NCBI RefSeq assembly: GCF_947568905.1
Contig: NC_079170.1
Span: 21,762,001-21,826,000, forward strand
DNA: 64,000 nt
Source of the DNA: Ostrea edulis
Lineage: Eukaryota
Direction of reading: 5' to 3'
In this document: positions 14,801-42,470 of the stretch, one piece after another
Layout: each line of letters opens with the position of its first letter
Numbering within the stretch: position 1 is the stretch's first letter
Notes under the pieces: model-generated
What the model was told of the DNA's origin: nothing
Databases searched by the model: none
Seen by the model: the letters and a program-made list of their open reading frames with translations, nothing else
Translations under genes and position numbers: made by a program

Positions 14801-17800
14801 GTTTAACCTGAAATGTACCAGAAAGTACCTTTGTGTATCAAATAACATGTTTGTGAAATTGCTGTTTTATCATTAATGTATAATTGGCTTCATAAGTGAA
14901 TTATCATCATAATTAATAGTATTTTCCTAAAGGATACTTCAGAAGTCCTACTTCCCAAGTGGTGCAAGAAAATGAGAACTCGGTTTGGAAAGCTTATCCA
15001 GAAAAAAGTATGGTGGTGGCGCCCGTGAATAGTACACGGAGAAGTGGGTTGTGACTAACTTTTCTTTCCTGAAGTCACACCGTCCGGGTTGCCAGCAGAC
15101 AGTCGGGATTACAAAAGGGTAAGCTGCAATGTACCACCTCTACACTGCCCTCTGACGAGTCTGACATGGACGATGTGACATTCCAATCGACCAGAAGAGT
15201 AGATGTTGTTCCATTTACCGATTCTACCACTACAGCGCCTAGGAGGATGATAACGAAAATGACATCCACAGAGAGTTGCAAGAGCTGATAGACAAGCTTG
15301 GGTTGAAGGCAGCCGCGAAATACGTGAAAATGTTGTGGAGATGATCAAGGCAGTGGAGAACCCCCGTAATGCCTATGCTAACTAACTTGCCCCCATCCAC
15401 ACCACACAGACATATGGGGGATTATCATGGTCTTTGTGGCAGAGTCAAATCGCCTACGGAAACTAGAGGAACAACAACAAATGCAGCCACATATTCAGTT
15501 TTATAGGCTAACTTAGAGTCAGCTATAATCCATGGTTCCACAACAACTACTAAAGTCTAATTTTAGTCATAGCAGTCGTACTCAGACGTGTCGTTCTGAT
15601 CAGATATAGAACACAGTTGTACTCACATCTGGGAGTACAATGATGTCTACCCCATTTTCCACTAACTTGTCTTGGGTCTTTGGTGAGACAGCTAGAGGAT
15701 ATAGACGACACGACACAGAAATCAAAAAGATTTCCTGTTTGTTAACACTCATGTAATGTAATGGGAACTTTTCGATACCAGATTAATTTTATGTGACATA
15801 AATAATGTCTATTTTTTGTATTGTTAATATCATCAGTTTTTGTAATGATTTTTTCGTATTCAAATCTTGATCAGAAAAAAACCCCTAGAAAAACCAACCG
15901 GAAAATAAATGACCTTAATGATTACAAGTTGACCTTGTCTCAGTCAGTAAGGGATTATTTGATCAGCTTGATAATTAAAACAAAATGTATGATCAATGTA
16001 AATCCAATAATGACCATTCATTGTAGAGGAAAGACATTTCATTGTACACAATTCGTTTTAAATGTAGAACAGTTACTAAAATAGCAATATATTTATTATA
16101 TAGTAACAATATATATTTTATTGGTACCGTATAAGTTTTTCATATTTACTAACATTACTTCAAATCAGGTTAGTTACTAGTATATGAAGCAAAGTTCATA
16201 AAATATTATACTGCCAGGGAACCTCACCGAGTAACCAGCCTAATTTATTTCCAGTTGAGATCTACCTCTTCTTTTTCGATGTAATTGCCCTTTAGTGTGA
16301 TGCAATTGGACCAACTGTATTCAAGTGTCATCAGCCCAAAACTGAAAAAGTCACGGTCATTTCCATTGACCACCTCCTCAACTGCCGTCACGACTTTTTC
16401 GTCAGACCGGAAATGACGTCCATGGTATCTAGTTTGGGAATAGGAAGAAGGCGCTAGGAGCTAGGTCTGGCGAATAGGCAGGATGTGGTATTAATTCATA
16501 CCCGTTTCGCTCCACAGCATCCGTTGCAACTTTGCAAACGTGGACTCTCGCGTTGTCATGTAAAAACTTATACGGTACCAATTTTGATGCACCAGATGCG
16601 CATTTCGACAAAAAATGTCTCCTCAGTGATGCTCAACCGAAATGTTTGAAATCCGAAATAACAATGAAGTTTTAGAGCTATTATAGGGGGAAACACAGTG
16701 TGCCAAAAAAGAGGAGTCAAATTCGTCTAAGGATAAGAGCTATGTTGCAGCAAAACACCTTTAGAGAGTTTACCTCGTCGTTTTTCACGGATGGCGGTCA
16801 TCAGTTGTTCTAGCAAGTTTGCATGATGCACTCCTGTTATTGTTTTTCTCTTATTATTCCAACATAATAACGCTTTTTACGTCCCAGAATACTGTGGTCA
16901 TCACTAACCAGCAGATGATTGCGTCTTGAACTTCTTTGACCTCGGGGATCCAGGCCCTATCCACTGATGACTCTGAGCTTTATTCTCTGGCTCATAATAA
17001 TGAACCTAAGTCTCATCTACCGTCACCAGACGCAAAAGAAAATCATCTTTTGACCTAAAACGTTTCAACAAGGCGCTGCATACTGATGTTCTGGTCACCA
17101 TTTGCTCATCGCTAAGGGATTTGGGGATCCATTGGGCTGTTAACTTGTGCATACCTAAACGATCATGTAAGATTGTTGAAACGCTGCCATGTGAAATGCC
17201 TAATGTCTGCGCTATTTCCTCCACCTGAATTCGCCTATCAGGGTATACCAGATTCAGAACTTTCTTACACATATCCTCGTCAGTGGCATACAGTGGACGT
17301 CCAGACCTGGCTTCGTCTTCTAAAGACGTTCTACCGCGTTTGAATTCCCCATCCCAAAAATTAGCCTGAGCATAAGATGGTGCAGAAGACACATAAACAT
17401 CGGCCAACTCACCGTATATTTCCTTGCCTGTTTTACCTTTTAAATACAAGTACCGAATTATAGCACGATACTCAACTTTAGATGAAAAGCATGCCTTTGC
17501 ATCACGAGCCATGTTTTATATTTATGTAGCAATATTCCATTATCACCTGCATATGGTGTTTATATATCTCAACTGATTCGATATGCAAGAGCTTGTTCTG
17601 GGTATAGTCAGGTTTTAAATCGAGGTAAGCTACTGACAAACAAGTCGATGGTACAGGGATTTCAACAGTCTCGATTGAAGTCAGCACTTCGCAAATTCTA
17701 TGGTCGTTATAACGATCTAGCTCGTCAATACAACCTCGCATTGGGTCAAATGCTGTCTGACGTGTTTCATACCGATTGTTAAGCCGTTCTTGGCACACTG

Positions 17801-24295: not shown

Positions 24296-27200
24296 ATGGA
24301 TCAAGATGACAAAATAAGTGTAAGTAATGACAAATCTACATATTTGTAAGTCTTTTTTGTAAAAAAATTAATAAAAATAAAAATATATAAAGTGGCTTCA
24401 GCTGTTTTCATATCACTTCCGAGTTCGAATTCGATGATTGAGTGTTGTACGTTAATCTGGATGTCGATATTGGTCGGTTCTAATTGAAATAATAATTCAT
24501 AAAACGAAAGTCCAAAAGAAAAAAAAAGAAGAAAAAGAGTGATGTTCAATAAGAATGTGTCTTATATGGCCTAGTTGTTGTTTGTCCCATAGAAATAAGC
24601 TAATTGATGTCGTGTGAACGTGTTCGTTGTGCTGTTTCACTGTATCCGGAATGACAAAGGCCTGTGTTTACTGTATATTTTTTGGCTGGTATGCAGTTTA
24701 TACTTCAATGCCAAGAAATTGACGTTATCTGTTTGTTAGCATTTGTGTGTTGATGCATTTTTCAGTAAAGTTTGCCAGTTATGCTGGTAGTAGACATTGT
24801 CATTAATCACTGGCCATGTTGTCTTTCTCTTTAATGAAGAGCGTAATCTTACCGTGTGGATTTTTCTTTTGTTTGTTTCATTTTGTAATTGTCATAAACG
24901 TGTCTTGTTATAAATCTCGGTGATTAGGAATTAAAAATTGGAATGAATGAATTGTATAACAGAAAGGGAATTCACTTGTTGGTTTTTGTGTTTTCTCTTT
25001 ACTCAAACAAAAAAAAAGAAGAAGATTAAAACGCAAAACAATATAAAACAGGAAATTACTCTTGATACTTAGTGTTACATAATGTATTTATATCCATATT
25101 CAACCCTCCTGGTATTTCCGCCACTTTATGTTTTTCGGTTGTTAGTCATGCTGTAATAATATTTTGTGGTGTTTAGTATTCTGTGTTAGCTGTGGTTGAT
25201 TTGCTATTCTGTGGTGTTTAGTATTTTGTGTTAGCTGTGATTGATTTCCTATTCTGTGATGTTTAGTATTTTGTGTTAGCTGTGATTGATTTCCTATTCT
25301 GTGGTGTTTAGTATTTTGTGTTAGCTGTGATTGATTTCCTATTCTGTGATGTTTAGTATTTTGTGTTAGTATAGCTGTGATTGATTCGCTATTCTGTGAT
25401 GTTTAGTATTTTGTGTTAGTATAGCTGTGATTGATTGGCTGTGCTGTGCTGTTTAGTATTTTGTGTTATTTGTGGTTGATTTGCTATTGTTTGATGTTTA
25501 GCATATTGTGTTAGCTGTTGTTGATGTGCTATTGTGTGGTGTTTAGTATTTTGTGTTAGCTAGGATTGATTTGCTATTGTTTGATGTTGAGCATTTTGTG
25601 TTATATGTGGTTGATTTGCTATTCTGTGATCTTTAGTATTTTGTATTTAGTGTTTAGAATTTTGTGTTAGCTATAGTTAATTTGCTATTCTGTGATGTTT
25701 AATATTTTGTGTTAGCTATAGTTAATTTGCTATTCTGTGATGTTTAGTATTTTGTGTTAGCTAGAATTGATTTGTTATTGTGTGATGTTTAGTAATTTTG
25801 TGTTAGCTATAGTTAATTTGCTATTCTGTGATGTTTAGTATTTTGTGTTAGCTAGAATTGATTTGTTATTCTGTGATGTTTAGTAATTTTGTGTTAGCTA
25901 GGATGATGTTTAGTATATTTTGTTAGCTGTTTTTGATTTGCTATTCTGTGATGTTTAGTATTTGTGTTAGCTAGGATTGATGTGCTATGTTGTGACATTT
26001 AGTACTTGTGTTAACTAGGATTGATTTGTTATTCTGTGATGTTTATCATTTTGTGTTAGCTTTGATTGATTTGCTATTCCCTGATGTTTAGTAATTTGTG
26101 TTAGGTGTGGTTAATTTGCTATACTGTGAGGTTTAGTATTTTGTGTTAGCTATGATTGATTGGTTATTCTGTGATGTTTAGTATTTTGTGTTAGCTGATA
26201 GATTTGCAATTCTGTGATGTTTAGTATTTTGTGTTAGCTAGGATTGATTTGTTATTCTTTGATGTTTAGTATTTTGTATAAGCTGAGATTGATGTGCTAT
26301 TCTGTGGTGTTTAATATTTTGTGCTAGCTAGGATTGGTTTGCTATTCTGTGCTAGCTGGGGGTGATTTGCTACTCCTTGCGAAAACGATTTTTTCATTCC
26401 TATATTGTTGATAACGATCTATGAATCCATTCCAGGGATGTTTATTACCAGTAGTCATTTCTTTAATATGGTATTGAATTGAGGATTGAATATCAGGTAG
26501 TAAGGGAAATGTCATTGGATCATAGCTTGTCAGAAAGTCAATACATCAAACAACTTATATACTATTTGATTGATATTTGACCCTTTTGTGGGCCTTCTAG
26601 TTACAGGGAGACGACCGTAGGAGACAAACCTTGTACAGGAGCATGTCATTTGACCCTGCCACCTTACAAAGGCCTCCTTCTATTCATTCTATTCGTTCTC
26701 TGAAACGTGCGCAATCTTTCAAATTCCAACCTGAACCCGCCGGAACAGTAACTGAGGAAGAAAGATATGCAGAATATTTCGTCCCTTCTAATTCTGGTCA
26801 AGGCCATGCAAACGTTCAAGACGTACCTGAGATAAAACAGACCAGGAACCTATCTGCAGCTGAGAGGAAGGAGCTAACCGATGAATATAAAGAAGCTGAT
26901 TCAATTGAAGAAAGCTCAGATGACATATCGGAACATGGAGGGTGCATAGAGTGTGTTAAGGCAATTCCAGTAATCTCGGGTGAGGAAATAGAGGAGGGCG
27001 ACCACATTGTGTTTGCTGGAGCAGTATATGATCATCATGGAATTGTCGTTTCGAAAAGGAAAGGCGGTAATGAAATTGAGATAGTGGAAGCAACCAACTC
27101 CATTTCCGGAGCAACTGCAAGTATTTTTTTCGGGGGGAAAGCAAACGTTCAACGTACCATCAAGACGTTTAACTTTATAACAGATCAAATACGAGTAGTT

Positions 27201-27914
27201 GTGTACAGAAAACCAAGATTTTCCAAGCAAGAAATCGTATGTCGTGCAAAGAAGTTTATCAATGAAGCTGACCCAAATAGGAAGAATTTTGATTATCATT
27301 TACTAGGGAATAATTGTGAGCATTTCGCAACCTTCTGTGTCACAGGAAAAAGATTCAGTATTCAGGTCAGAAAATTTGTAATGATTGCATCAATTTTCGT
27401 TCGACGTGGATTTCGAGGAATCAGTGATGAAAAGCTTCGAAATGAGAAGGAATTCGAAAATAATATCATATGCAAGAAATGTTATGAAGTCAACAAGAAG
27501 CTCCTCGGTGCAAAAGTTACACCGATATTGCGTCATGATGACGTAAATGTAGGTGATGTCATCAGATATTCTTATTGGAATCTCTGGCACGATGCTGTAG
27601 TTCTGAGGATTGTCAAGAAAGAGAGTAAGTTTGTGCTCTGTGAAATAGCTCATTATTGTTTTCGTGGCCCCTTCTCTCATAGAGAAATTATCAGAGAGGA
27701 ATTGAAAATTTATTTCAAGGGCAGTGTCAGTGTTCTTCATTACGAACCCCCGAATTATGATGTTTACGACCCGGAAGTTGTAGTTCACCGGGCAGAACAA
27801 CGAATGGAAGAGAAATGCTTTGTCTTCTTCTCCAATGATTCCAGTCACTACGCCCGCTGGTGCAAGTTAAAACTAGTACGGCAATCTTCAATGGTGATGG
27901 AGACTGCGGTGTAG
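24296..27914 (+). CDS. Tandem double LRAT/PLAAT-like (NlpC/P60 H-box/NC) protein, copy 1, 443 aa
   Basis: Exon 1 24296-24319 (MDQDDKIS|gtaagt) plus exon 2 26607-27914 (ttacag|GDDRRR...). Motifs GDHIVF..YDHHGIVV..RA..DYHLLGNNCEHFATFC, then a second module GDVIRY..WHDAVV..RA..SNDSSHYARWC. Confidence 0.9.
25150..26370. repeat. 45-bp intronic minisatellite, ~27 diverged copies
   Basis: Unit ttgctattctgtgatgtttagtattttgtgttagctgtgattgat; orthologous to 37880-40900. Confidence 0.95.
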
Positions 27915-28325
27915 AAGGTATCGGCGTCAGAATGTGATTTTGAGATAGTGCATTCTCCACAAAACACAAACAGAATATTTTCCATGCATGATTTTACTGC
28001 ATGATGTGTAAATGATATTCGGTATGCTATTTGTAGATTATGGTGTGCAGATGCATATTGACTGTGAGTTTTATATGAAGTGGGTTTTTTTCTAATTGAC
28101 ATATATTATATTTTCGGCAAAATTAAGGGCTCAAGAATTTGATATTTTTATGTAATTAATAGATTTGCAGACTTTTTCACCATGCTTGCACATATTAGAC
28201 TGATTTTAAGTTTGTAGATGTGTATTATAATTATTTGATGTGTATTATGATTATTTGATGTGTATCATGATTATTTGACTTTCTAGGCTGTCAGTCCTTT
28301 GTTTAATGAGTTGATCCATTTATTT

Positions 28326-29038
28326 TGTACTGGCCAAGTATGAAATGAAGTAGGAAACAACTTGTAAATGCGTTTAACGACGATTTACTACAAAAAATAC
28401 AAAGAAAATATACAATAAATACAAGATATTTTAGATTAAATCACACATGATAACACATCCTAGCAAATCAATTATAATGTATTACATGTACTAGAAAATA
28501 ACAGACACTGCAGTATAGATAAGAAAAATTGCCGACATAATGTAAACAAAAGAGGCATAACTCTAGATTATTACAGATCAAGAATGAAAAACATGATGAA
28601 AATGGAGTTATCTCCCGTATATGATAAATGTGCACGTATCCATCGATATCACATACATGTCAATAATATTACCTGACTTCCTAATTGCATTATAAATAAT
28701 GAACTTGAATATAATTGCACAAATACTAAAAGCAATTACTTTATACTGAAATTACTAAGTATGCAAAATTTACCGAGATACATAAATGCACAGTTTATAC
28801 CTAAATAAAAACAATAATACACTCACCAATTCAGAAGTTTCCTCTAGTGAACATAATTATCAGTACAAACCTGACTGGTAAGTTAACTAGTAAAATTTGA
28901 CTGGAAAACTGGTAATGCAGGTATGCCACTTGCCGCGTCCTGCCATAATAGAATTACGGGCTTTACACTGTGCCCCAAAAATGATGACATCACATTACAA
29001 CTCCAGAGAGAGCACTAATTAACGAAATGGCCGTAACA
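28326..29038 (-). mobile_element. Solo LTR (713 bp)
   Basis: Minus strand TGTTACGGCCA...CAGTACA, flanked by tattt/ttttt. Absent at the homologous site of unit B (~42875). Internal donor-like G|GTGAGT at ~28825. Confidence 0.7.
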
Positions 29039-31872: not shown

Positions 31873-34800
31873 ATGGCTGACGTTTTATTGCCAGATTTAC
31901 ACGGAATTCCGAATTCTAACATTTCTGAGGCGACGGGCTTATCGGAAAGATGGAAACGATGGCTGCGTGCTTTCAAACTATATGCTGCAGGGAAAGGAGT
32001 TACTCATCCTGATCAAAAGCAAGCTCTGCTACTGCATACAGCAGGGATGGATGTGCAAGTCATTTATATACCTTACCAGAAAGTGAAGGAGATAATGCGT
32101 ATGATAAAGCGGTGGGAGCTCTTGACACTTATTTCACCCCCAAGCAAACATACCGTATGAAAGGTCCGTGTTTATAAGTATGACACATATGCCAAACGAA
32201 AGAATTGAACAATATATAACGAGGCTACGCCAAAAATCTGAAACGTGATTTTGATAATCGTGAAGCTGTCGACGAAAGTATACGGGATCAAATTATAGAC
32301 AAGTGTTTGAATCATAATCTCAGGCGCAAAATACTTGAAAAGGGACGCAACCTTAACTTAACACAATTACGTGAAGTGGCTAAAGCTATGGAGGACTCTG
32401 GGCGACAAGCAAAGTCAATCGAAACCCAAGGTCAAAGTGTCAAAAGTGACATAAACAAAGTTAATTATTCAAAAGGTAAATTTGTGGACAAAATAGTTCG
32501 CAGTAGTAAGCCACAAATATGTTACAGTTGTGGTCTAGAGGGCCATATAAGGACTGACCCAAAATGCCCGGCACGTGGAAAAAAATGTCGGAAGTGTAAG
32601 CAAGTTGGTCATTTTGAACGTCAGTGTAAGACCAAGGACAAGCCAAAAACTAATTGTAAGCCGGAGAAAATTCGTCAAGTTTCTCAGCAACAGACACACA
32701 CTTCGAGTGATGATGACTATGCATTTAACATAAATCAGATAAATGCTGTATGTGAAAATATTGTGGTATCAGTTGGGAACGTCAACCTGAAGATGATAGT
32801 TGACTCTGGTGCATCCTGCAATATCATGGGAAGACGATTAATTATGGGAATATCTGAAGCGAAATCATATAGAGTGCGTTTCAACAAAATCATGTAAAGA
32901 ATTGTTTGCGTATGGATCAACCGAACCGTTGAAAGTAGTGGGAACATTCGTGTCACTATTGAATGTAACAGCAAAACTATTCCAAATGTTGAATTTGTTG
33001 TTATTGATGGGAAAGGATAGGCATTACTTGGTCGTGAAACTGCGTTAAAACTGGGTGTCCTTAAACTCGTACATCATGTCACCGAAGGAGCTGTTTGCGC
33101 TCCGAACAAGACAATTTTTGAGAAATACCCAGAATGTTTTACTGGAGTAGGAAAGTTGAAATCGTTTCAACTTGAAATACCGATTGATCCGGACGTGGAG
33201 CCAGTTATCCAGCCGATGAGACGTATACCGTTCAATTTGCGTAATAAACTTGAGAAGAAATTGAATGAACTCTTAGATCTTGATATAATTGAACGCGTTG
33301 AAGAACCTAGTTCGTGGGTATCACCGGTTGTGTGTGTACCGAAGCGTTCCAGTGATGATATTCGTCTCTGCATGGACACGCGTTTGGCAAACACAGGTGG
33401 GAAACGTGTCAGACACCCTATTCCGCCGATTGTTGAGTTACTTCAAGAAATGAATTCTAGTAAAGTGTTCAGCAAATTAGATGTCACCTGGGCGTATCAT
33501 CAGATTGAGTTAAAACCTGAATCGAGAGAAATAACTACTTTTGTAACACATAGGGGTCTTTTCAGATACAAACGCCTTATGTTTTGGTGTGAGTTGTGCC
33601 CCTGAATTATATCAAAAAGTCATGCAACAGGTCTTACAAGGGTGTGAAGGGGTTCATAATATTATGAATGATATTATTGTACATGCTAGTTGTAAAGCTG
33701 AACATAATAAATGTCTTGAAAATGTAGATATGGTATTGAGAGACAAAGGTATTACTTTGAACAAGGACAAATGTCAGTTTAACATGTCACAAGTCGTTTT
33801 TATGGGTCATGTTTTATCAGACCGTGATATCGGGTCGGCTGATGTAAAAGTAAAAGCCGTAGTTGAAGCGCGCGAGCCGAAGAACTCTGCTGAAGTTCAC
33901 AGGTTTTTTTAGGTCTTGCCAGGTACAGTGCGAGGTTTATTCCGGATCTAGCCACTGTCTCGGCTCCGCTTCGTGCGCTTACTCGTAAGAAGGCCATTTT
34001 CAAATGGGGTAAACCGGAGCAAGAATCATTTGACGAACTTAAGAAGCGCCTTGCTAATGCAGAAACATTAGGGTATTACGATAAAAACGCGCCGACTAAG
34101 GTCATTGCCGATGCTAGTCCGCTCGGTCTCGGGGCGGTACTCGTACAGGAACAAGGAAATGAATTGCGTATTATTTCGTATGCGAGTCGAAGTCTAAGCG
34201 ACACAGAGCGTCGATACTCTCAGACGGAGAAAGAGGCGCTAAATCTAGTATGGGCGTGCGAAAGGTTCCATATATATATCTATGGAAGTGAGTTTGAACT
34301 ATTAACAGATCACAAACCTCTCGAATGTATATACTCTCCAAAATCAAAGGTTTGTGCACGAATTGAATGTTCGGTCTTACGTATGCAAGCTTACAAGTTT
34401 AAAAGTTCGGTATATTCCAGGACCGAAAAATATCGCAGATGCGTTATCGCGTTTGATCAAGGAAAACAGAGTAATTCAGCAGACGACTATGTATGATTCG
34501 TTGCCAATGAGTCGACACCGGTAGTACTTACAACACGCGAGCTCGAGCGAGCATCAGAACATGATTCAGAACTCAAAGCGGCGGCAAGAGAATGTCTAGT
34601 CAATGGAAAATGGCATCGTATAGAATTCAAAGAGTATTTGCCGATTCGGAATGAGTTATGTGCAATAGGTAAATTGATATTACGCAGAACACGTATTGTG
34701 GTACCGATCGATTATCGAGAGCGTGTACTTGAGTTGGCACATGAGGGTCATCCCGGTATAGTTGCTATGAAAATCCGATTGCGTAGTAAAGTTTGGTGGC

Positions 34801-36765
34801 CTGGAATTGATAGGTGCATAGAAAAGTACTGTCGGAGTTGCTATGGATGTCAACTCGTGAGTCAACCTTGCAAACCCGAGCCAATGAAGCGTACCGAGCT
34901 ATCGTCTGCACCAAGGCAACATTTAGCGGCGGATCTGTTAGGTCCTTTGCCAAGTGACCATTACATGTTTGTATTAGTCGATTATTATAGTCGGTATTTC
35001 GAGGTCGCAGTCACTAAAACGATAACGTCCGAGAAAATTACATCTCTGATGTCAAAGTTCTTTTTAACCCACGGCTTGCCATTATCTATTCATAAAAATA
35101 ACGGACGTCAGTTTACTAGTCAACATTTTGAAAATTTCATGTCGGAAAATGGCATACTTCATCATAGGACAACGCCATTATGGCCACATGCGAACGGCGA
35201 GGTTGAAAGGCAGAATCGGTCGATCATGAAAAGAGTAAGAATAGCTCAAGTTGAAGGTCGCGACTGGAGGTCAGAGCTCGAAAAGTTTCTTATGATCTAT
35301 CGGAGTACTTCTCATACTGTTACCGGTGTAAGTCCGTCAGAGTTGCTTTTGGGCAAAAATTGAGAACAAAATTACCCGAATTAGCCGATTATAATGTTGA
35401 TGACCTTGAGGTACGCGACCGAGACTTAGAAAGGAAGGAGAAAGGATAACTATATGCTGACAAGCAACGTGGTGCATGCGAAACGGATATTCGCACTGGC
35501 GATAAGGTACTTGTAAAGCAAGACCGTGAAAATAAAATGTCGACACCATTTAATCCTTCACCCTTTAAAGTTGTTGATAAAACTAGCAATAGTGTAGTCG
35601 TTGAGTCTGATCAAGGTGTTCAGTACAGGCGAAATGTTACACATTTGAAAAAGTTTCATGAAAGAAATAATACAGCAATGTCAGAACCTGTATCTGTTGA
35701 AAAGTCAAAAGTTTCTCAAACTGAAATTATGCCAAATTCTAATATTGATTCTGAATTTATTCAGGGTAATTGTACTGATACCCCCAGTTCTGAGTCAACT
35801 CCATTGTAAATGCACACACTTTATTCATTTTAGCAAGCATAATCCAAACATACAGCATACATGTGTATGTGTGTGGTCGTGTGGTGTGATTAACTGCAAA
35901 TATACAAAAACAAAAATAAGTAAAGTATTTCATAGCAAAGACAAATTACCTAACATTTGATAAATGTTATACTAGTACACAAATACCCTATCAATCTCAG
36001 TAAGTAACATTGTTTACAGTAAATACTCTACATTTGTACTCTAAAAAACCAGTGCATAATGTACAAAAACAATTTCATCAGACTAGAAAGTGAAAAATTT
36101 ATGTTCCTAGAAACTACATAATATTACACATAAATAGCTAAAGGAAAACATTCCTATCAATACATGAAAATTGCAGAGTGCACAGAAAATTCACACCAAA
36201 AGTTTCACAGCATAATTCTATGTCCTTCAATACTATGACAATTAATATGAACCATATTATCATATACTTTGCAAACATTACGATTAAGCTATGAATTTTC
36301 TAACAAACGTGCACTCTAAACATGCTACCAAAATGAACTTTCGCAAGTAAACACGCTGTAAACATTCAGTTAACAACATTGTGTACATAAATTCTCTTGT
36401 AGAATAATTTGCATATAAAATGTCAGGTTTAACTTACCATCTTAGAAGCTTCTCTCATAGGAAAAGTATAGAGTCTTCAGCACAGGTGACTAGTAATCTA
36501 GAAATGACTTGCAAATTGTACTAAAGCTCGTGCACCCGCGAAAAATGTAAAAATCCAAGCTAAACCGGATATTGAAACATTCAAATAAATCCGGAAAGAT
36601 ATGGAACTGAAAAATCCGGAAAAATGTTTGGTACAATGTTAAATTGGCCATAACAGTAATAATGTTAATGAATCTGTTGAAAATGCCCAGAGTTCAGGTG
36701 TACTTTCTAGACCAGTTAGAGAGAAAAAATTGCCATCAAAATTTGATGAATTTGTAATGAACTGA
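31873..36765 (+). pseudogene. Gypsy gag-pol (zinc knuckles, protease, RT, RNase H, integrase) with frameshifts and stops
   Basis: ERWKRWLRAFKLY; CYSCGLEGH..C and CRKCKQVGHFERQC; MIVDSGASCN; FSKLDVTWAYHQI..YKRLMF; ADASPLGLGAVL..YASRSLSDTERRYSQTEKEAL; HEGHPG..C..C, DYYSRYFEV, NGEVERQNR; C-terminal RPVREKKLPSKFDEFVMN* after the solo LTR. Confidence 0.95.
35771..36655 (-). mobile_element. Solo LTR (885 bp) nested in the Gypsy integrase tail
   Basis: Minus strand TGTTATGGCCA...CAGTACA with a perfect 5-bp TSD GTAAT (35766-70, 36656-60). Removal restores the frame QGN-NVNESVENAQSSGVLSRPVR. Confidence 0.85.
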
Positions 36766-37362: not shown

Positions 37363-40300
37363 ATGGATCAAGATGAAAGAATACGTGTAAGTAATGGCAA
37401 ATGTACAAATATATGCAATTCTTTATATTAAAAAATATGAGGGGAATTCAGCTGTTTCCATATCATTGCACTTTCAAATTCGATGATTGAATGTTGTACG
37501 CTAATTCTGATGTCGATATTGGTAGGTTCGAATTGGAATATTAATTAATCAAAAGAAATTCTTGAATAAAGAAGTAGGAAAGAAACAGGGTGATGTTCAA
37601 TAAAAATGTGCTTTAGATGTGGCCTAGCTGTTTGTCCCATAGAAATAAGCTATTTGATCATGTCCTACATGCCCTGTGAACGTTTTCGTTGTATTGTTTA
37701 ACTCAATGCTGATTGACAAAGGTCTGTGTCTATTGTATATTCATTGGATGATATGCAGTTTCTACCTCAATGCCAAGACTTAGTAATAGATAATGTATTT
37801 ATATCCATATCCTGTCCTGTCTATTCATCCCTCCGGGTATATCCGTCACTTTATGTTTTACGTTTCCTAGTCATGCTGTAATAGTATTTTGTGTTAGCTA
37901 TGATTGATTGGCTATTCTGTGATGTTTAGTATTTTGTGTTAGCTATGATTGATTGGCTATTCTGTGATGTTTAGTATTCTGTGTTAGCTATGATTGATTT
38001 GTTATTGTTTGATGTTTAGTATTTTGTGTTAGCTGTGATTGATTTGTTATTCTGTGATGTTTAGTATTTTGTGTTAGCTATGATTGATTTGCTATTCTGT
38101 GATGTTTAGTATTTTGTGTTAGCTATGATTGATTTGTTATTGTTTGATGTTTAGTATTTTGTGTTAGCTGTGATTGATTTGTTATTCTGTGATGTTTAGT
38201 ATTTTGTGTTAGCTGTGATTGATTTGTTATTCTGTGATGTTTAGTATTTTGTGTTAGCTGTGATTGATTTGTTATTCTGTGATGTTTAGTATTTTGTGTT
38301 AGCTGTGATTGATTTGTTATTCTGTGATGTTTAGTATTTTGTGTTAGCTGTGATTGATTTGTTATTGTGTGATGTTTAGTATTTTGTGTTAGCTGTGATT
38401 GATTTGTTATTGTGTGATGTTTAGTATTTTGTGTTAGCTGTGATTGATCTGTTATTGTTTGATGTTTAGTATTTTGTGTTAGCTGTGATTGATTTGTTAT
38501 TCTGTGATGTTTAGTATTTTGTGTTAGCTGTGATTGATTTGTTATTCTGTGATGTTTAGTATTTTGTGTTAGCTATGATTGATTTGTTATTGTGTGATGT
38601 TTAGTATTTTGTGTTAGCTGTGATTGATTTGTTATTCTGTGATGTTTAGTAATTTGTGTTAGCTATGATTGATTTGTTATTGTTTGATGTTTAGTATTTT
38701 GTGTTAGCTATGAATGATTTGTTATTGTTTGATGTTTAGTATTTTGTGTTAGCTGTGATTGATTTGCTATTCTGTGATGTTTAGTATTTTGTGTTAGCTG
38801 TTGTTGATGTGCTATTGTTTCATGTTTAGTATTTTGTGTTAGCTGTGATTGATTTGTTATTGTGTGATGTTTAGTATTTTGTGTTATCTGTGATTGATTT
38901 GCTAATCCGTGATGTTTAGTATTTTGTGTTAGCTGTGATTGATTTGCTATTGTGTGATGTTTATTATTTTGTGTTAGCTGTGATTGATTTGTTATTCTGT
39001 GATGTTTAGTATTTTGTGTTAGCTGTGATTGATTTGTTATTGTGTGGTGTTTAGTATTTTGTGTTAGCTGTGATTGATTCGCTATTCTGTGATGTTTAGT
39101 ATTTTGTGTTAGCTGTGATTGATTTGTTATTGTGTGGTGTTTAGTATTTTGTGTTAGCTATAATTGATTCGCTATTCTGTGATGTTTAGTATTTTGTGTT
39201 AGCTATAATTGATTTGCTATTCTGTGATGTTTAGTATTTTGTGTTAGCTGTGATTGATTTGGTATTCTGTAATATTAAGAACTTTGTGTTAGCTATAATT
39301 GATTTGCTATTCTGTGATGTTTAGTATTTTGTGTTAGCTGTGATTGATTTGGTATTCTGTAATATTAAGAACTTTGTGTTAGCTATAATTGATTTGCTAT
39401 TCTGTAATGTTTAGTACTTTGTGTTAGCTATAATTGATTTGCTATTCTGTGATGTTTAGTATTTTGTGTTAGCTATAATTGATTTGCTATTCTGTGATGT
39501 TTAGTATTTTGTGTTAGCTATAATTGATTTGGTATTCTGTAATGTTAAGAACTTTGTGTTAGCTATAATTGATTTGCTATTCTGTAATGTTTAGTACTTT
39601 GTGTTAGCTATGATTGATTTGCTATTCTGTAATGTTAAGAACTTTGTGTTAGTTGTCATTGATTCGCTATTCTGTAATGTTTAGTGTTTTGTGTTAGCTA
39701 TAATTGATTTGCTATTCTGTGATGTTTAATATTTTGTGTTAGCTATGATTGATTTGCTATTCTTTGATGTTTAGTATTTTGTGTTAACTGTGGTTGATTT
39801 GCTATTGTTTGATGTTTAGCATTTTGTGTTAGCTGTTGTTGATTTGCTATTGTTTGATGTTTAGTATTTTGTGTTGGCTGTGGTTGATTTGCTATTCTGT
39901 GATGTTTAGTATTTTGTGTTAGCTTTGATTGATTCGCTATTGTGTGATGTTTAGTATTTTGTGTTAGCTGTGATTGATTTGTTATTCTGTGATGTTTAGT
40001 ATTTTGTGTTAGCTGTGATTGATTTGTTATTCTGTGATGTTTAGTATTCTGTGTTAGCTGTAATTGATTTGTTATTGTGTGATGTTTAGTATTTTGTGTT
40101 AGCTGTGATTGATTTGTTATTGTGTGATGTTTAGTATTTTGTGTTAGCTGTGATTGATTTGTTATTCTGTGATGTTTAGTATTTTGTGTTAGCTGTTGTT
40201 GATGTGCTATTGTTTGATGTTTAGTATTTTGTGTTAGTTATGATTGATTTGTTATTCTGTGATGTTTAGTATTTTGTGTTAACTGTGGTTGATTTGCTAT

Positions 40301-42470
40301 TGTTTGATGTTTAGCATTTTGTGTTAGCTGTTGTTGATTTGCTATTGTTTGATGTTTAGTATTTTGTGTTGGCTGTGGTTGATTTGCTATTCTGTGATGT
40401 TTAGTATTTTGTGTTAGCTTTGATTGATTCGCTATTGTGTGATGTTTAGTATTTTGTGTTAGCTGTGATTGATTTGTTATTCTGTGATGTTTAGTATTTT
40501 GTGTTAGCTGTGATTGATTTGTTATTCTGTGATGTTTAGTATTCTGTGTTAGCTGTAATTGATTTGTTATTGTGTGATGTTTAGTATTTTGTGTTAGCTG
40601 TGATTGATTTGTTATTGTGTGATGTTTAGTATTTTGTGTTAGCTGTGATTGATTTGTTATTCTGTGATGTTTAGTATTTTGTGTTAGCTGTTGTTGATGT
40701 GCTATTGTTTGATGTTTAGTATTTTGTGTTAGTTATGATTGATTTGTTATTCTGTGATGTTTAGTATTTTGTGTTAACTGTGGTTAATTTGCTATTCTGT
40801 AATGTTTAGTATTTTGTGTTAGCTTTGATTGATTCGCTATTGTGTGATGTTTAGTGTTGTGTTTAGCTGGGATTGATGTGATATTCTGATGTGTTAGCTG
40901 GGGATGATTTGCTACTCCCTGACAAAATGATTTGTTCATTCCTATATTGTTGACAAGGATCTCTTAATTCAACTCAGGGATGTTTATCACCAGTAGTCAT
41001 TTCTTTAATATGATAGAGGATTAAATATCAGGTAATAAGGGAAATGTCATTTGATCATAGCTTGTTAAAAAGTCAATCGAATTTTCAATGCCACTCTTGG
41101 GTATATACATCAAACAACTTATGTACTATTTGATTGATAATTTGTGAGCCTTCTAGTTTCAGGGAAACGACCATAGGAGACAAAACTTAAACAGTAGCAT
41201 ATCATTTGACCCTGCCACCTTACAAAGGCCTCCTTCTATTCATTCTATTCGTTCTCTGAAAAGTGCGCAATCTTTCACATTCCAACCGGACCCCGCAGGA
41301 ATAATAACTGATGAAGAAAGAGATGCAGAATATTCTGCCCCTTCTAGTCCTGATCAAGGCCATTCAAACGTTCACGACGTACCGGAAACAGAACAAGTCA
41401 GGAACCTTTCTGCATCTGAGGGGAAGAAAGTAACCGATGAATATAAAGAAGCTGATACAATTGAAAAGAGCTCAGACGACATATCGGAACATGGAGGGTG
41501 CATAGAGTGTGTTAAGGCAATTCCAGTAATCTCGGGTGAGGAAATAGAGGAGGGCGACCACATTGTGTTTGCTGGAGCAGTATATGATCATCATGGAATT
41601 GTCGTTTCAAAAAGGAAAGACGGTAATGAAATTGAGATAGTGGAAGCAACCAACTCCATTTTCGGAGCAACTGCAGGCATTTTGTTCGGGGGAAAAGCGA
41701 ACGTTAAAAGTACTATTAAGACGTTTAACTTTATAACAGATCAAATAAGAATAGTTGTGTACAGAAAACCAAGATTTTCCAAGCAAGAAATCGCATGCCG
41801 TGCCAAGAAGTTTATCAATGAAGCTGACCCAAATAGGAAGAATTTTGATTATCATTTACTAGGGAATAATTGTGAGCATTTCACAACATTCTGCGTCACA
41901 GGAAAGAGATTCAGTGTTCAGGTCAGAAAATTCAGAATGATTGCATCAATTTTCGTTCGACGTGGATTTCGAGGAATCAGTGATGAAAAACTTCGAAATG
42001 AGAAGGAATTCGAAAACAACATCATATGCAAACAATGTTATGAAGTCAACAAGAAGCTCCTCAGTGCAAAAGTTACACCGATATTGCGTCATGATGACGT
42101 AAATGTAGGTGATGTCATCAGATATTCTTATTGGAATCTCTGGCACGATGCTGTAGTTCTGAGGACTGTCAAGAAAGATAGCAAGTTTGTGCTCTGTGAA
42201 ATAGCTCATTATTGTTTTCGTGGCCCCTTCTCTCATAGAGAAATTATCAGAGAGGAATTGAAAATTTATTTCAAGGGCAATGTCATTGTTCTTCATTACG
42301 AACCCCCGAATTACGATGTTTACGACCCGGAAGTTGTAGTTCACAGGGCAGAAAAGCGAATGCAAGAGAAATGCTTTGCCTTTTTCTCCAATGATTCCAG
42401 TCACTACGCCCGCTGGTGCAAGTTAAAACTAGTACGGCAATCTGCAATGGTGATGGAGACTGCGGTGTAG
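37363..42470 (+). CDS. Tandem double LRAT/PLAAT-like protein, copy 2, 443 aa
   Basis: Exon 1 37363-37386 (MDQDERIR|gtaagt) plus exon 2 41163-42470 (tttcag|GNDHRR...). Exon 2 is open for 435 codons with no early ATG, so splicing is required. NCEHF and NDSSHY are both retained. Confidence 0.9.
37880..40900. repeat. 45-bp intronic minisatellite, ~67 copies, with a 495-bp block duplication
   Basis: gatgtttagt at 37921, 37966, 38011 and onward; the variant block starting aactgtgg recurs at 39786 and 40281. Confidence 0.95.

What the first reader, a model, noticed from the sequence alone, without database searches (positions are those of the whole stretch)
26607..27914. Double LRAT/PLAAT enzyme with complementary active sites (His/Glu/Cys module plus His/His/Ser module)
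Seen: the protein is an internal duplication. Each half is CxxC, GD(H/V)I, an H-box, RA, an NC-box and a terminal C. Half 1 has YDHHGIVV, EIVE and NNCEHF (Cys codon 27315). Half 2 has WHDAVV, EIAHY and NDSSHY (Ser codon 27840). Both paralogs keep this exactly. There is no C-terminal hydrophobic anchor. Known: PLAAT/LRAT enzymes use a His-His-Cys triad with NCEHF, usually as one domain with a membrane anchor; relatives include picornaviral H-box/NC 2A proteins and immune-linked PLAAT3/4. Inference: half 2 is a selected pseudo-enzyme, a lipid-binding module or a serine-nucleophile acyl acceptor. The two CxxC pairs may bind zinc. Residue equivalences are assigned by motif position, not by alignment.
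Basis: partly seen in the sequence, partly recalled or inferred. Interest (0 to 1): 0.75.

Follow-up and report, generated by a model that had tools for sequence, protein, structure and literature searches.

The report
Oyster double LRAT/PLAAT-domain protein gene
This flat-oyster gene encodes a soluble protein with two copies of a lipid-enzyme fold, one with a complete cysteine active site and one conserved serine variant, belonging to an uncharacterised family seen so far almost only in bivalves.

Summary
Window 26601-27914 (+) is the large second exon of a two-exon Ostrea edulis gene. Exon 1 is 24296-24319, and a public run holds the spliced form. The product is 445 aa, and an 89% identical tandem paralog lies at 37363-37386 plus 41157-42470.

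The protein has a disordered tail followed by two LRAT/PLAAT-fold domains from an old internal duplication (profile-profile E 5e-16). Both halves match solved PLAAT structures (Z 9.8-11).
- **D1** keeps all four LRAT-type catalytic residues: His, Glu/His, Tyr and Cys in NCEHF.
- **D2** keeps both His and has Ser for Cys in 109 of 115 close relatives.

D2 is at least as conserved as D1. There is no membrane anchor.

Most likely D1 is a thiol acyl-enzyme and D2 is a selected, non-catalytic binding or regulatory module. A Ser-nucleophile or acyl-acceptor role is not excluded. Zinc binding by the two CxxC pairs could not be tested.

Relatives with membrane segments and up to eight D2 modules occur in other bivalves. 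I found no paper on this family. I rate it a new variant of a known kind, of moderate interest.

The parts
24296..24319 (+). Exon 1 of copy 1 (8 codons, MDQDDKIS), followed by a GTAAGT donor
   Evidence: It is homologous to exon 1 of copy 2 in the NCBI model. A contig in run X4 joins exactly these letters to 26601.
25160..26351 (+). 45-bp minisatellite (26 copies) inside intron 1
   Evidence: Tandem Repeats Finder. The same array has 67 copies in copy 2, at 37882-40888.
26601..27914 (+). Exon 2 of copy 1: the rest of the CDS (437 codons plus stop) of the 445-aa double-LRAT protein
   Evidence: Open frame. The acceptor is at 26600/26601. In run X4 contig depth steps from 9 to 60-110 at the acceptor.
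26601..26927 (+). N-terminal tail that is variable across the family, with the conserved short motif RSxS[FL]D(P)..LQR[PAS]PS (here RSMSFDP...LQRPPS)
   Evidence: The motif recurs in oyster and mussel relatives. Selection is relaxed here (omega 0.70 between the two copies).
26928..27428 (+). D1: LRAT/PLAAT domain with a complete catalytic set. Codons: CxxC 26943/26952, GDH 26997-27005, His 27033, Glu 27087, Tyr 27294, Cys 27315 (NCEHF), second Cys 27336. A helical extension follows.
   Evidence: Pfam LRAT scores 65 bits. PDB profile hits to PLAAT2/3/4 reach E 1.7e-5. VIA gives Z 9.8 to H-REV107 over model residues 16-142.
27444..27887 (+). D2: second LRAT/PLAAT-fold domain, a Ser variant. Codons: CxxC 27471/27480, GDV 27552-27560, His 27588, His 27651, RA 27789, Phe (in place of the catalytic Tyr) 27819, Ser 27840 (NDSSHY), Cys 27861.
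   Evidence: hhalign to D1 gives E 5e-16. The AF2 model of D2 alone has pLDDT 90.6. The Foldseek top 9 are all PLAAT/LRAT-type folds, TMt up to 0.69. VIA gives Z 10.4-11 to PLAAT2/3/4. 85 of 87 D2 domains hit Pfam LRAT.
37363..37386 (+). Exon 1 of the tandem paralog (copy 2)
   Evidence: tblastn with the NCBI model P0002.
41157..42470 (+). Exon 2 of copy 2: the same 445-aa architecture with all motifs kept, 45 differences over 423 aligned residues (89% identical)

Best explanation
A two-exon Ostrea edulis gene, present here as two tandem copies, encodes a soluble protein with no signal peptide and so is presumably cytosolic. It has a disordered, probably phospho-regulated N-terminal tail followed by two permuted NlpC/P60 (LRAT/PLAAT) domains that arose by an old internal duplication.

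D1 carries the full catalytic equipment of LRAT-type thiol enzymes: His, a Glu/His that orients it, the Tyr seven residues before the nucleophile, and Cys in NCEHF. It most likely attacks a lipid ester, forms a thioester acyl-enzyme, and passes the acyl group to water or to an acceptor (inferred by homology).

D2 keeps the fold, both His and a near-invariant Ser at the nucleophile position, but has lost the thiol and the catalytic Tyr. It is most likely a selected non-catalytic module that binds a substrate, product or partner and positions or regulates D1 (inferred). The two near-invariant CxxC knuckles, one before D1 and one in the D1-D2 linker, probably stabilise the unit, perhaps through zinc (a guess).

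Shown here: gene structure, splicing, the duplication, both folds, the residue states and their conservation. Inferred: the chemistry, the role of D2, and zinc.
For: - **Gene and expression:** open frame, splice sites and a spliced contig.
- **Two LRAT domains:**. The two-domain AF2 model has pLDDT 85.7 and pTM 0.81.
- **D1 residues are nearly invariant in the compact class:** His131 116/117, Glu/His149 114/118, Tyr218 125/125, Cys225 126/127.
- **D2 residues:** His316 123/127, His337 122/123, Ser400 109/115, but Phe 101/114 where LRAT has the essential Tyr154. PMC3142127 states that Cys, His and Tyr are the essential residues.
- **Selection:** D2 has omega 0.27 against 0.24 for D1 and 0.70 for the tail. 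The D2 alignment is more conserved than the D1 alignment.
- **Same pattern in divergent relatives:** the D1(Cys)/D2(Ser) pattern holds in relatives with long linkers and with 2-8 D2 modules.
- **No transmembrane segment**.
Against: - No biochemical data exist for any member.
- Joint conservation of His-His-Ser over deep divergence is also what an active serine site would show.
- One clade has Cys at the D2 position, so Ser and Cys interchange there.
- Solved PLAAT enzymes use a C-terminal membrane anchor that this protein lacks, so the substrate may not be a membrane phospholipid.
Confidence: 0.55

Rival explanations
1. D2 is chemically active. Either it is a Ser-His-His hydrolase or transferase in its own right, or its Ser is the acceptor of the acyl group carried by the D1 thioester (an intramolecular Cys-to-Ser acyl relay).
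For: His316, His337 and Ser400 are conserved together in three divergent architectural classes. A clade of three relatives has Cys at this position while keeping both His, as expected if the position acts as a nucleophile. Papain-like families with a conserved Ser for Cys exist, and some Cys-to-Ser mutants keep partial activity (PMC10318531). D2 is at least as conserved as D1.
Against: The Tyr regarded as essential in permuted NlpC/P60 enzymes is Phe or Trp in most D2 modules (PMC3142127). No acidic third residue is present to activate a Ser. Whether the Cys clade is a reversion is unresolved (AU p 0.11). From memory, unchecked here: Cys-to-Ser mutants of LRAT and PLAAT3 are reported inactive.
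Confidence: 0.22
2. The protein does not act on lipids. D1 is a thiol peptidase, deacylase or de-modifying enzyme acting on proteins or small molecules, as in PPPDE/DeSI enzymes or the viral 2A H-box/NC proteins, and D2 recognises the target.
For: There is no membrane anchor. The NC-box gives a weak Peptidase_C97/PPPDE hit (E 0.002-0.006, below cut-off). D2 matches Aichivirus 2A at Z 7.3. The NlpC/P60 superfamily includes peptidases and amidases.
Against: The best sequence and structure matches of both domains are PLAAT/LRAT lipid enzymes, well above the PPPDE match. The exact NCEHF box and the Tyr seven residues before the Cys are LRAT-family signatures.
Confidence: 0.12
3. D2 is a decaying relic of the duplication without a function of its own.
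For: It has lost two of the four catalytic residues, and it falls below the Pfam cut-off in this protein.
Against: Omega is 0.27 between the paralogs. Mean column identity is 57%, higher than D1. The module is retained, and even multiplied up to eight-fold, in relatives.
Confidence: 0.03

Closest known systems
Human PLAAT1-5 (HRASLS, H-REV107, TIG3) phospholipase A/acyltransferases
   Same: Both domains have the same permuted NlpC/P60 fold: Z 9.8-11 and TMt 0.6-0.69 to 4dot, 4dpz, 7zom, 7zot and 2kyt. D1 shares the H-box His, the NCEHF box, the Tyr seven residues before the Cys, and the SxQV motif after the NC-box.
   Different: The human proteins have one domain and a C-terminal membrane anchor. 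They have no CxxC knuckles, no second Ser-type domain and no long N-terminal tail. In D1 the third triad residue is mostly Glu rather than His.
LRAT (lecithin:retinol acyltransferase)
   Same: Pfam family PF04970. The catalytic Cys161, Tyr154 and His60 pattern and the second Cys seven residues downstream (Cys168) are all mirrored in D1. The downstream Cys is also kept in D2.
   Different: LRAT is a single-domain membrane protein specialised for retinol and restricted to vertebrates (PMC5133064).
LRATD1/LRATD2 (FAM84A/B)
   Same: These are LRAT-domain proteins described as not yet characterised as enzymes (PMC5133064). That they are soluble is from memory.
   Different: They have a single LRAT domain. 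I made no direct comparison here.
Picornavirus 2A H-box/NC proteins (Aichivirus A 2A, 7zv1)
   Same: Same fold family: Z 7.3 to D2.
   Different: They are viral single domains, and the match is much weaker than the match to PLAATs.
Serine-bearing papain-like families and tandem active/inactive domain enzymes (for example receptor tyrosine phosphatases D1/D2)
   Same: A conserved Ser in place of the catalytic Cys is a rare but recorded theme in papain-like folds (PMC10318531). An active domain followed by a conserved inactive copy parallels the tandem RPTP domains (abstract listed).
   Different: This is an analogy only, with no homology. No LRAT-family case was described in the papers I could search.

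Membership tests
LRAT/PLAAT family (Pfam PF04970, permuted NlpC/P60) | Match to the family HMM above the curated cut-off | tested here: met
   D1 scores 65.2 bits against a cut-off of 24.3. D2 of this protein alone scores 21.3 bits, below the cut-off. However, 85 of 87 family D2 domains match at E<=0.01, the best at 1.5e-8.
LRAT/PLAAT family (Pfam PF04970, permuted NlpC/P60) | Permuted papain-like fold with the nucleophile helix near the C-terminus | tested here: met
   AF2 models have pLDDT 85.7 and 90.6. D1 gives Z 9.8 to 2kyt. D2 gives Z 10.4-11 to 7zot, 4dpz, 4dot and 7zom. The Foldseek top hits for D2 alone are PLAAT structures.
LRAT/PLAAT family (Pfam PF04970, permuted NlpC/P60) | Catalytic His (H-box) and Cys in the NCEHF box | tested here: met
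   This holds for D1 only: His131 and Cys225 (P0001 numbering; codons 27033 and 27315) are nearly invariant. D2 does not meet it, because Ser replaces Cys (codon 27840; Ser in 109/115).
LRAT/PLAAT family (Pfam PF04970, permuted NlpC/P60) | Essential Tyr seven residues before the nucleophile (LRAT Tyr154) | tested here: met
   D1 has Tyr218 in 125/125. D2 does not meet it: Phe in 101/114, and Trp or Phe in the long-linker relatives. The role of the Tyr is taken from PMC3142127.
PLAAT1-5 / LRAT subfamily (tail-anchored enzymes) | C-terminal hydrophobic membrane anchor | tested here: not met
   No 19-residue window reaches Kyte-Doolittle 1.6 in either copy or in oyster and mussel orthologs. Only a short hydrophobic remnant follows the SxQV motif of D1.
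PLAAT1-5 / LRAT subfamily (tail-anchored enzymes) | PLA1/2 or acyl-transferase activity through a thioester intermediate | not testable with these tools
   This needs recombinant protein and lipid assays.
Zinc-knuckle (CxxC...CxxC) metal site | Four ligands within bonding distance of one metal | not testable with these tools
   Both CxxC pairs are nearly invariant: 107/109, 111/111, 121/121 and 123/123. Relatives keep a CxxC before D1 and one after it.

The most novel reading that the evidence does not exclude
D2 is the first LRAT-fold domain that works with a serine. Either it is a Ser-His-His acyl-hydrolase or transferase, or it is the built-in acceptor of the acyl group from the D1 thioester. 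In the second case the protein would be a two-station Cys-to-Ser acyl relay, and its membrane-embedded relatives with up to eight D2 modules would be multi-site acyl carriers.
Probability: 0.18. Interest if true: 0.75.

Novelty: new variant of a known kind. Interest (0 to 1): 0.5.

Why it matters
PLAAT/LRAT enzymes remodel phospholipids, make N-acyl-PE and retinyl esters, degrade organelles, and act as host factors or restriction factors for viruses. All characterised members are single-domain, Cys-dependent and membrane-anchored.

This family adds a soluble form in which a complete Cys domain is fused to a strongly conserved Ser variant that Pfam does not call at its cut-off in this protein. 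It has sister architectures in other bivalves that insert membrane segments and multiply the Ser module.

It offers a natural test of what a Cys-to-Ser, Tyr-to-Phe LRAT pocket still does: bind, regulate or catalyse. It also offers a handle on lineage-specific lipid or immune biology in commercially important bivalves. If D2 is simply a regulatory pseudo-enzyme, this is a tidy but unsurprising example of a common evolutionary theme.

Tried and rejected
- **Pairwise BLASTP of the two halves:** nothing (E 9.1). Family profiles were needed.
- **phmmer of the whole protein against PDB sequences:** no hit.
- **Complex prediction with D1 and D2 as separate chains:** no verdict (score 0.02; controls not run; my alignments were not used). 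This is not evidence either way.
- **Word-based homolog search with the D2 region of a long-linker relative:** only two proteins returned.
- **Paper searches** for the locus names, LRAT or PLAAT with oyster, mussel or bivalve, and tandem LRAT or pseudo-enzyme: nothing on this family. Anantharaman and Aravind 2003 is not held in the library.
- **Run search:** no run on record as RNA. Expression rests on one spliced contig and a depth step in run X4, whose kind is not on record.
- **Secondary reversion in the Cys-bearing D2 clade:** the quick tree nests the clade, but the AU test does not reject a sister position (p 0.11).
- **C. bovis protein P0197** (17 weak stretches): rejected as a repeat artefact.
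- **Strand-register reasoning on the triad geometry** from secondary structure alone: inconclusive, so I did not use it.
- **The 152-aa antisense ORF at 27390-27848:** a mechanical by-product of the coding frame.
Full report
**What is in the window**

The window is eukaryotic. It has sparse ORFs, transposon ORFs and masked N runs. The best protein hits name Ostrea edulis.

The finding lies in a single long open frame, 26601-27914 (+). A second copy with the same frame lies at 41157-42470.

The NCBI model of copy 2 (P0002, 445 aa) starts in an 8-codon exon at 37363-37386. Copy 1 has the homologous mini-exon at 24296-24319, with a GTAAGT donor and a ...ttctag acceptor ending at 26600.

I laid contigs of four public runs on 26352-28500. 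One contig of run X4 carries exactly the exon-1 letters fused to position 26601. Contig depth there steps from 9 in the intron to 60-110 in the exon. The spliced form therefore exists, and the product of copy 1 has 445 aa. The kind of that run is not on record, so this is partial evidence of expression.

Residue numbers below are those of P0001, the 423-aa model that starts at 26643. Add 22 for the full-length protein.

**Checking the observation**

- Pfam LRAT (PF04970) matches the protein at 65 bits, with two stretches.
- The second half alone reaches 21 bits, just under the 24.3-bit cut-off.
- Pairwise BLASTP of the halves shows nothing.
- Profiles built from 84-88 relatives (A1-A3) align D1 to D2 with probability 98.6% and E 5e-16. 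CxxC, GD, the His box, RA, the N(C/S)xHF box and the trailing Cys are all in register.
- Of 87 D2 domains scanned singly, 85 hit Pfam LRAT at E<=0.01.

The structure predictions agree.

- An AF2 model of residues 96-415 has pLDDT 85.7 and pTM 0.81. D2 alone has pLDDT 90.6.
- VIA-align matches D2 (model residues 201-317) to PLAAT4, HRASLS2 and PLAAT3 at Z 10.4-11, with rmsd about 3.1 Å over about 99 residues.
- VIA-align matches D1 (model residues 16-142) to H-REV107 at Z 9.8.
- For D2 alone, the nine best Foldseek hits are eight PLAAT/HRASLS entries and one Euglena respiratory-supercomplex subunit, 8iuf_E7.

The internal duplication and the two LRAT domains are therefore confirmed.

**Residue states and conservation**

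In 93 relatives found by the word search, and in 232 proteins after the exhaustive profile search, I assigned domains with my own D1 and D2 HMMs.

In the compact class, to which the window genes belong:

| Domain | Position | State |
|---|---|---|
| D1 | His131 | 116/117 |
| D1 | Glu149 | Glu 84, His 30 of 118 |
| D1 | Tyr218 | 125/125 |
| D1 | Cys225 | 126/127 |
| D2 | His316 | 123/127 |
| D2 | His337 | 122/123 |
| D2 | Ser400 | 109/115 (Cys 3, Thr 1, Pro 1) |

HMMER's alignment of the D2 profile to HRASLS2 is weak (E 0.17). It puts His316 on the catalytic His, RA on RA, Ser400 on the catalytic Cys, and Phe393 on the Tyr seven residues upstream.

That last position matters. The literature on permuted NlpC/P60 enzymes treats this Tyr (LRAT Tyr154) as essential alongside Cys and His (PMC3142127). 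D1 keeps it without exception. D2 has Phe in 101 of 114, and Trp or Phe in more distant relatives.

D2 has therefore lost two of the four catalytic residues, not one.

The 'terminal C' seven residues after the nucleophile is the known second Cys of LRAT, described as buried and probably structural (PMC3142127).

**Selection**

Between the two window copies, omega is 0.24 for D1, 0.27 for D2 and 0.70 for the N-terminal tail (the counts are small). Across the family, the D2 alignment has higher mean column identity (57%) than the D1 alignment (41%). D2 is not decaying.

The exhaustive search gave 733 representatives at E<=1e-10. Among the best 150, plus the first 93, I find three architectures.

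- **Compact D1-D2:** 128 proteins.
- **Long linker:** D1, about 150 residues, then D2. 35 proteins.
- **Multiple D2:** D1 followed by two to eight D2 modules. 32 proteins. Examples are P0094 (1391 aa, Potamilus), P0114 (Sinanodonta) and P0123 (Mytilus).

The D2 His/His/Ser set holds in all three classes: Ser in 33/34 and 76/87 of the non-compact classes.

The non-compact classes carry two or three strongly hydrophobic segments and a conserved CxxC between D1 and the first D2. The window protein and its close orthologs have none. The oyster gene is therefore the soluble form of a family that also has membrane-embedded forms.

Every D1-D2 member that carries an organism name is a bivalve: Ostrea, Saccostrea, Crassostrea, Mytilus, Mya, Pinctada, Mercenaria, Potamilus and Sinanodonta. 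A flatworm protein has D2-like modules. A halibut protein has about seven weak tandem LRAT domains. Many members are unnamed.

In the ESM Atlas, only one cluster shares the two-domain shape. It is molluscan, with 51 members and TM 0.88.

The O. edulis genome has four full D1-D2 loci and about 19 single-LRAT loci.

**The Cys exception**

Three unnamed compact proteins (P0122, P0129, P0141) have Cys at the D2 nucleophile position while keeping both His and the Phe. They form one clade nested among Ser forms in a quick tree rooted on long-linker proteins. An AU test does not reject placing them as sister to all other compact proteins (p 0.11).

With Ser in the outgroup, parsimony favours a secondary Ser-to-Cys change. 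This is not settled.

**Mechanism**

D1 has everything a PLAAT/LRAT enzyme needs except the membrane anchor. I take it to be a thiol acyl-enzyme acting on a lipid ester (inference by homology).

For D2 two facts pull in opposite directions. The loss of the thiol and of the Tyr hydroxyl argues against catalysis. The tight joint conservation of His-His-Ser argues for a pocket that still does something.

The reading I favour (0.55) is a selected non-catalytic module that binds a substrate, product or partner and positions or regulates D1.

A chemically active Ser, as nucleophile or as acceptor of the D1 acyl group, remains possible (0.22). Ser-based papain-like families are on record (PMC10318531).

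A non-lipid substrate (0.12) and a functionless relic (0.03) are the other rivals.

The two CxxC pairs are nearly invariant. In all classes there is one before D1 and one after it, which fits a single clasp around D1, perhaps with zinc. Juxtamembrane S-acylation is an alternative for the relatives that have membrane segments.

The N-terminal tail carries a recurrent motif, RSxS[FL]D(P)..LQR[PAS]PS. It looks like a phospho-dependent docking site. This is a lead only.

**Comparison with known families and novelty**

The protein is a member of the LRAT/PLAAT family by HMM, by fold and, for D1, by catalytic residues. It fails the tail-anchor feature of PLAAT1-5 and LRAT. D2 fails the Cys and Tyr features.

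Databases call all members 'uncharacterized' or 'LRAT domain-containing'. I found no paper on the architecture. The foundational 2003 superfamily paper could not be read here.

Tandem active-plus-inactive domains and Cys-to-Ser variants are both known themes. I therefore rate this a new variant of a known kind, with moderate interest (0.5). If the Ser proves chemically active, the interest would be considerably higher.

Noticed in passing
window 25160-26351 and 37882-40888: Intron 1 of both LRAT copies holds the same 45-bp minisatellite, with 26 copies in copy 1 and 67 copies in copy 2. It is strongly G-over-C skewed.
   Followed up: partly
window 32307-35363 (+): Retroelement ORFs (gag-like zinc knuckle and protease, then integrase) lie between the two copies. 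An earlier first-reader note (s1-279372) puts the element's end just 5' of copy-2 exon 1 at 37363. I saw the ORFs and the exon position, but I did not map the element's ends.
   Followed up: partly
window 17006-17512 (-): A mariner-type transposase-like ORF of 168 aa.
   Followed up: no
window 26658-26720 (copy 1) and 41214-41276 (copy 2); relatives P0004, P0006, P0007, P0015, P0054: The N-terminal tail has a recurrent short motif, RSxS[FL]D(P)..LQR[PAS]PS, conserved between oysters and mussels. The first part resembles a phospho-Ser docking site. Copy 1 has RSMSFDP, while copy 2 has SSISFDP.
   Followed up: partly
proteins P0155, P0156, P0174, P0205 (long linker); P0094, P0114, P0123, P0125 (multi-D2): Relatives in clams, mussels and freshwater mussels insert 2-3 hydrophobic segments and a CxxC between D1 and D2, and carry up to eight Ser-type D2 modules. 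The membrane topology is unknown.
   Followed up: partly
proteins P0122, P0129, P0141: A clade of unnamed compact relatives has Cys instead of Ser at the D2 nucleophile position, giving His/His/Cys in D2. They were seen on many transcript-sized contigs.
   Followed up: partly
protein P0195 (Hippoglossus hippoglossus, 1125 aa): A fish protein with about seven weak tandem LRAT-like domains, so tandem LRAT arrays are not confined to bivalves.
   Followed up: no
PDB 8iuf chain E7: A subunit of the Euglena gracilis respiratory supercomplex is the best VIA match to D1 plus its helical extension (Z 11.5, 159 residues aligned, rmsd 5.0 Å). I did not establish its identity.
   Followed up: no
G000 C1:105368798-105369751 (-) and C7:33092628-33093581 (-): Two further full-length D1-D2 loci in the same genome, each in one open frame. 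A cluster of single-LRAT loci lies on C7 around 10.05-10.38 Mb.
   Followed up: no
window 27819 and 27849, run X4/X5 contigs: Contigs with loose ends inside D2 carry letters that do not match this copy. They probably come from another paralog or allele joined by the assembler.
   Followed up: no
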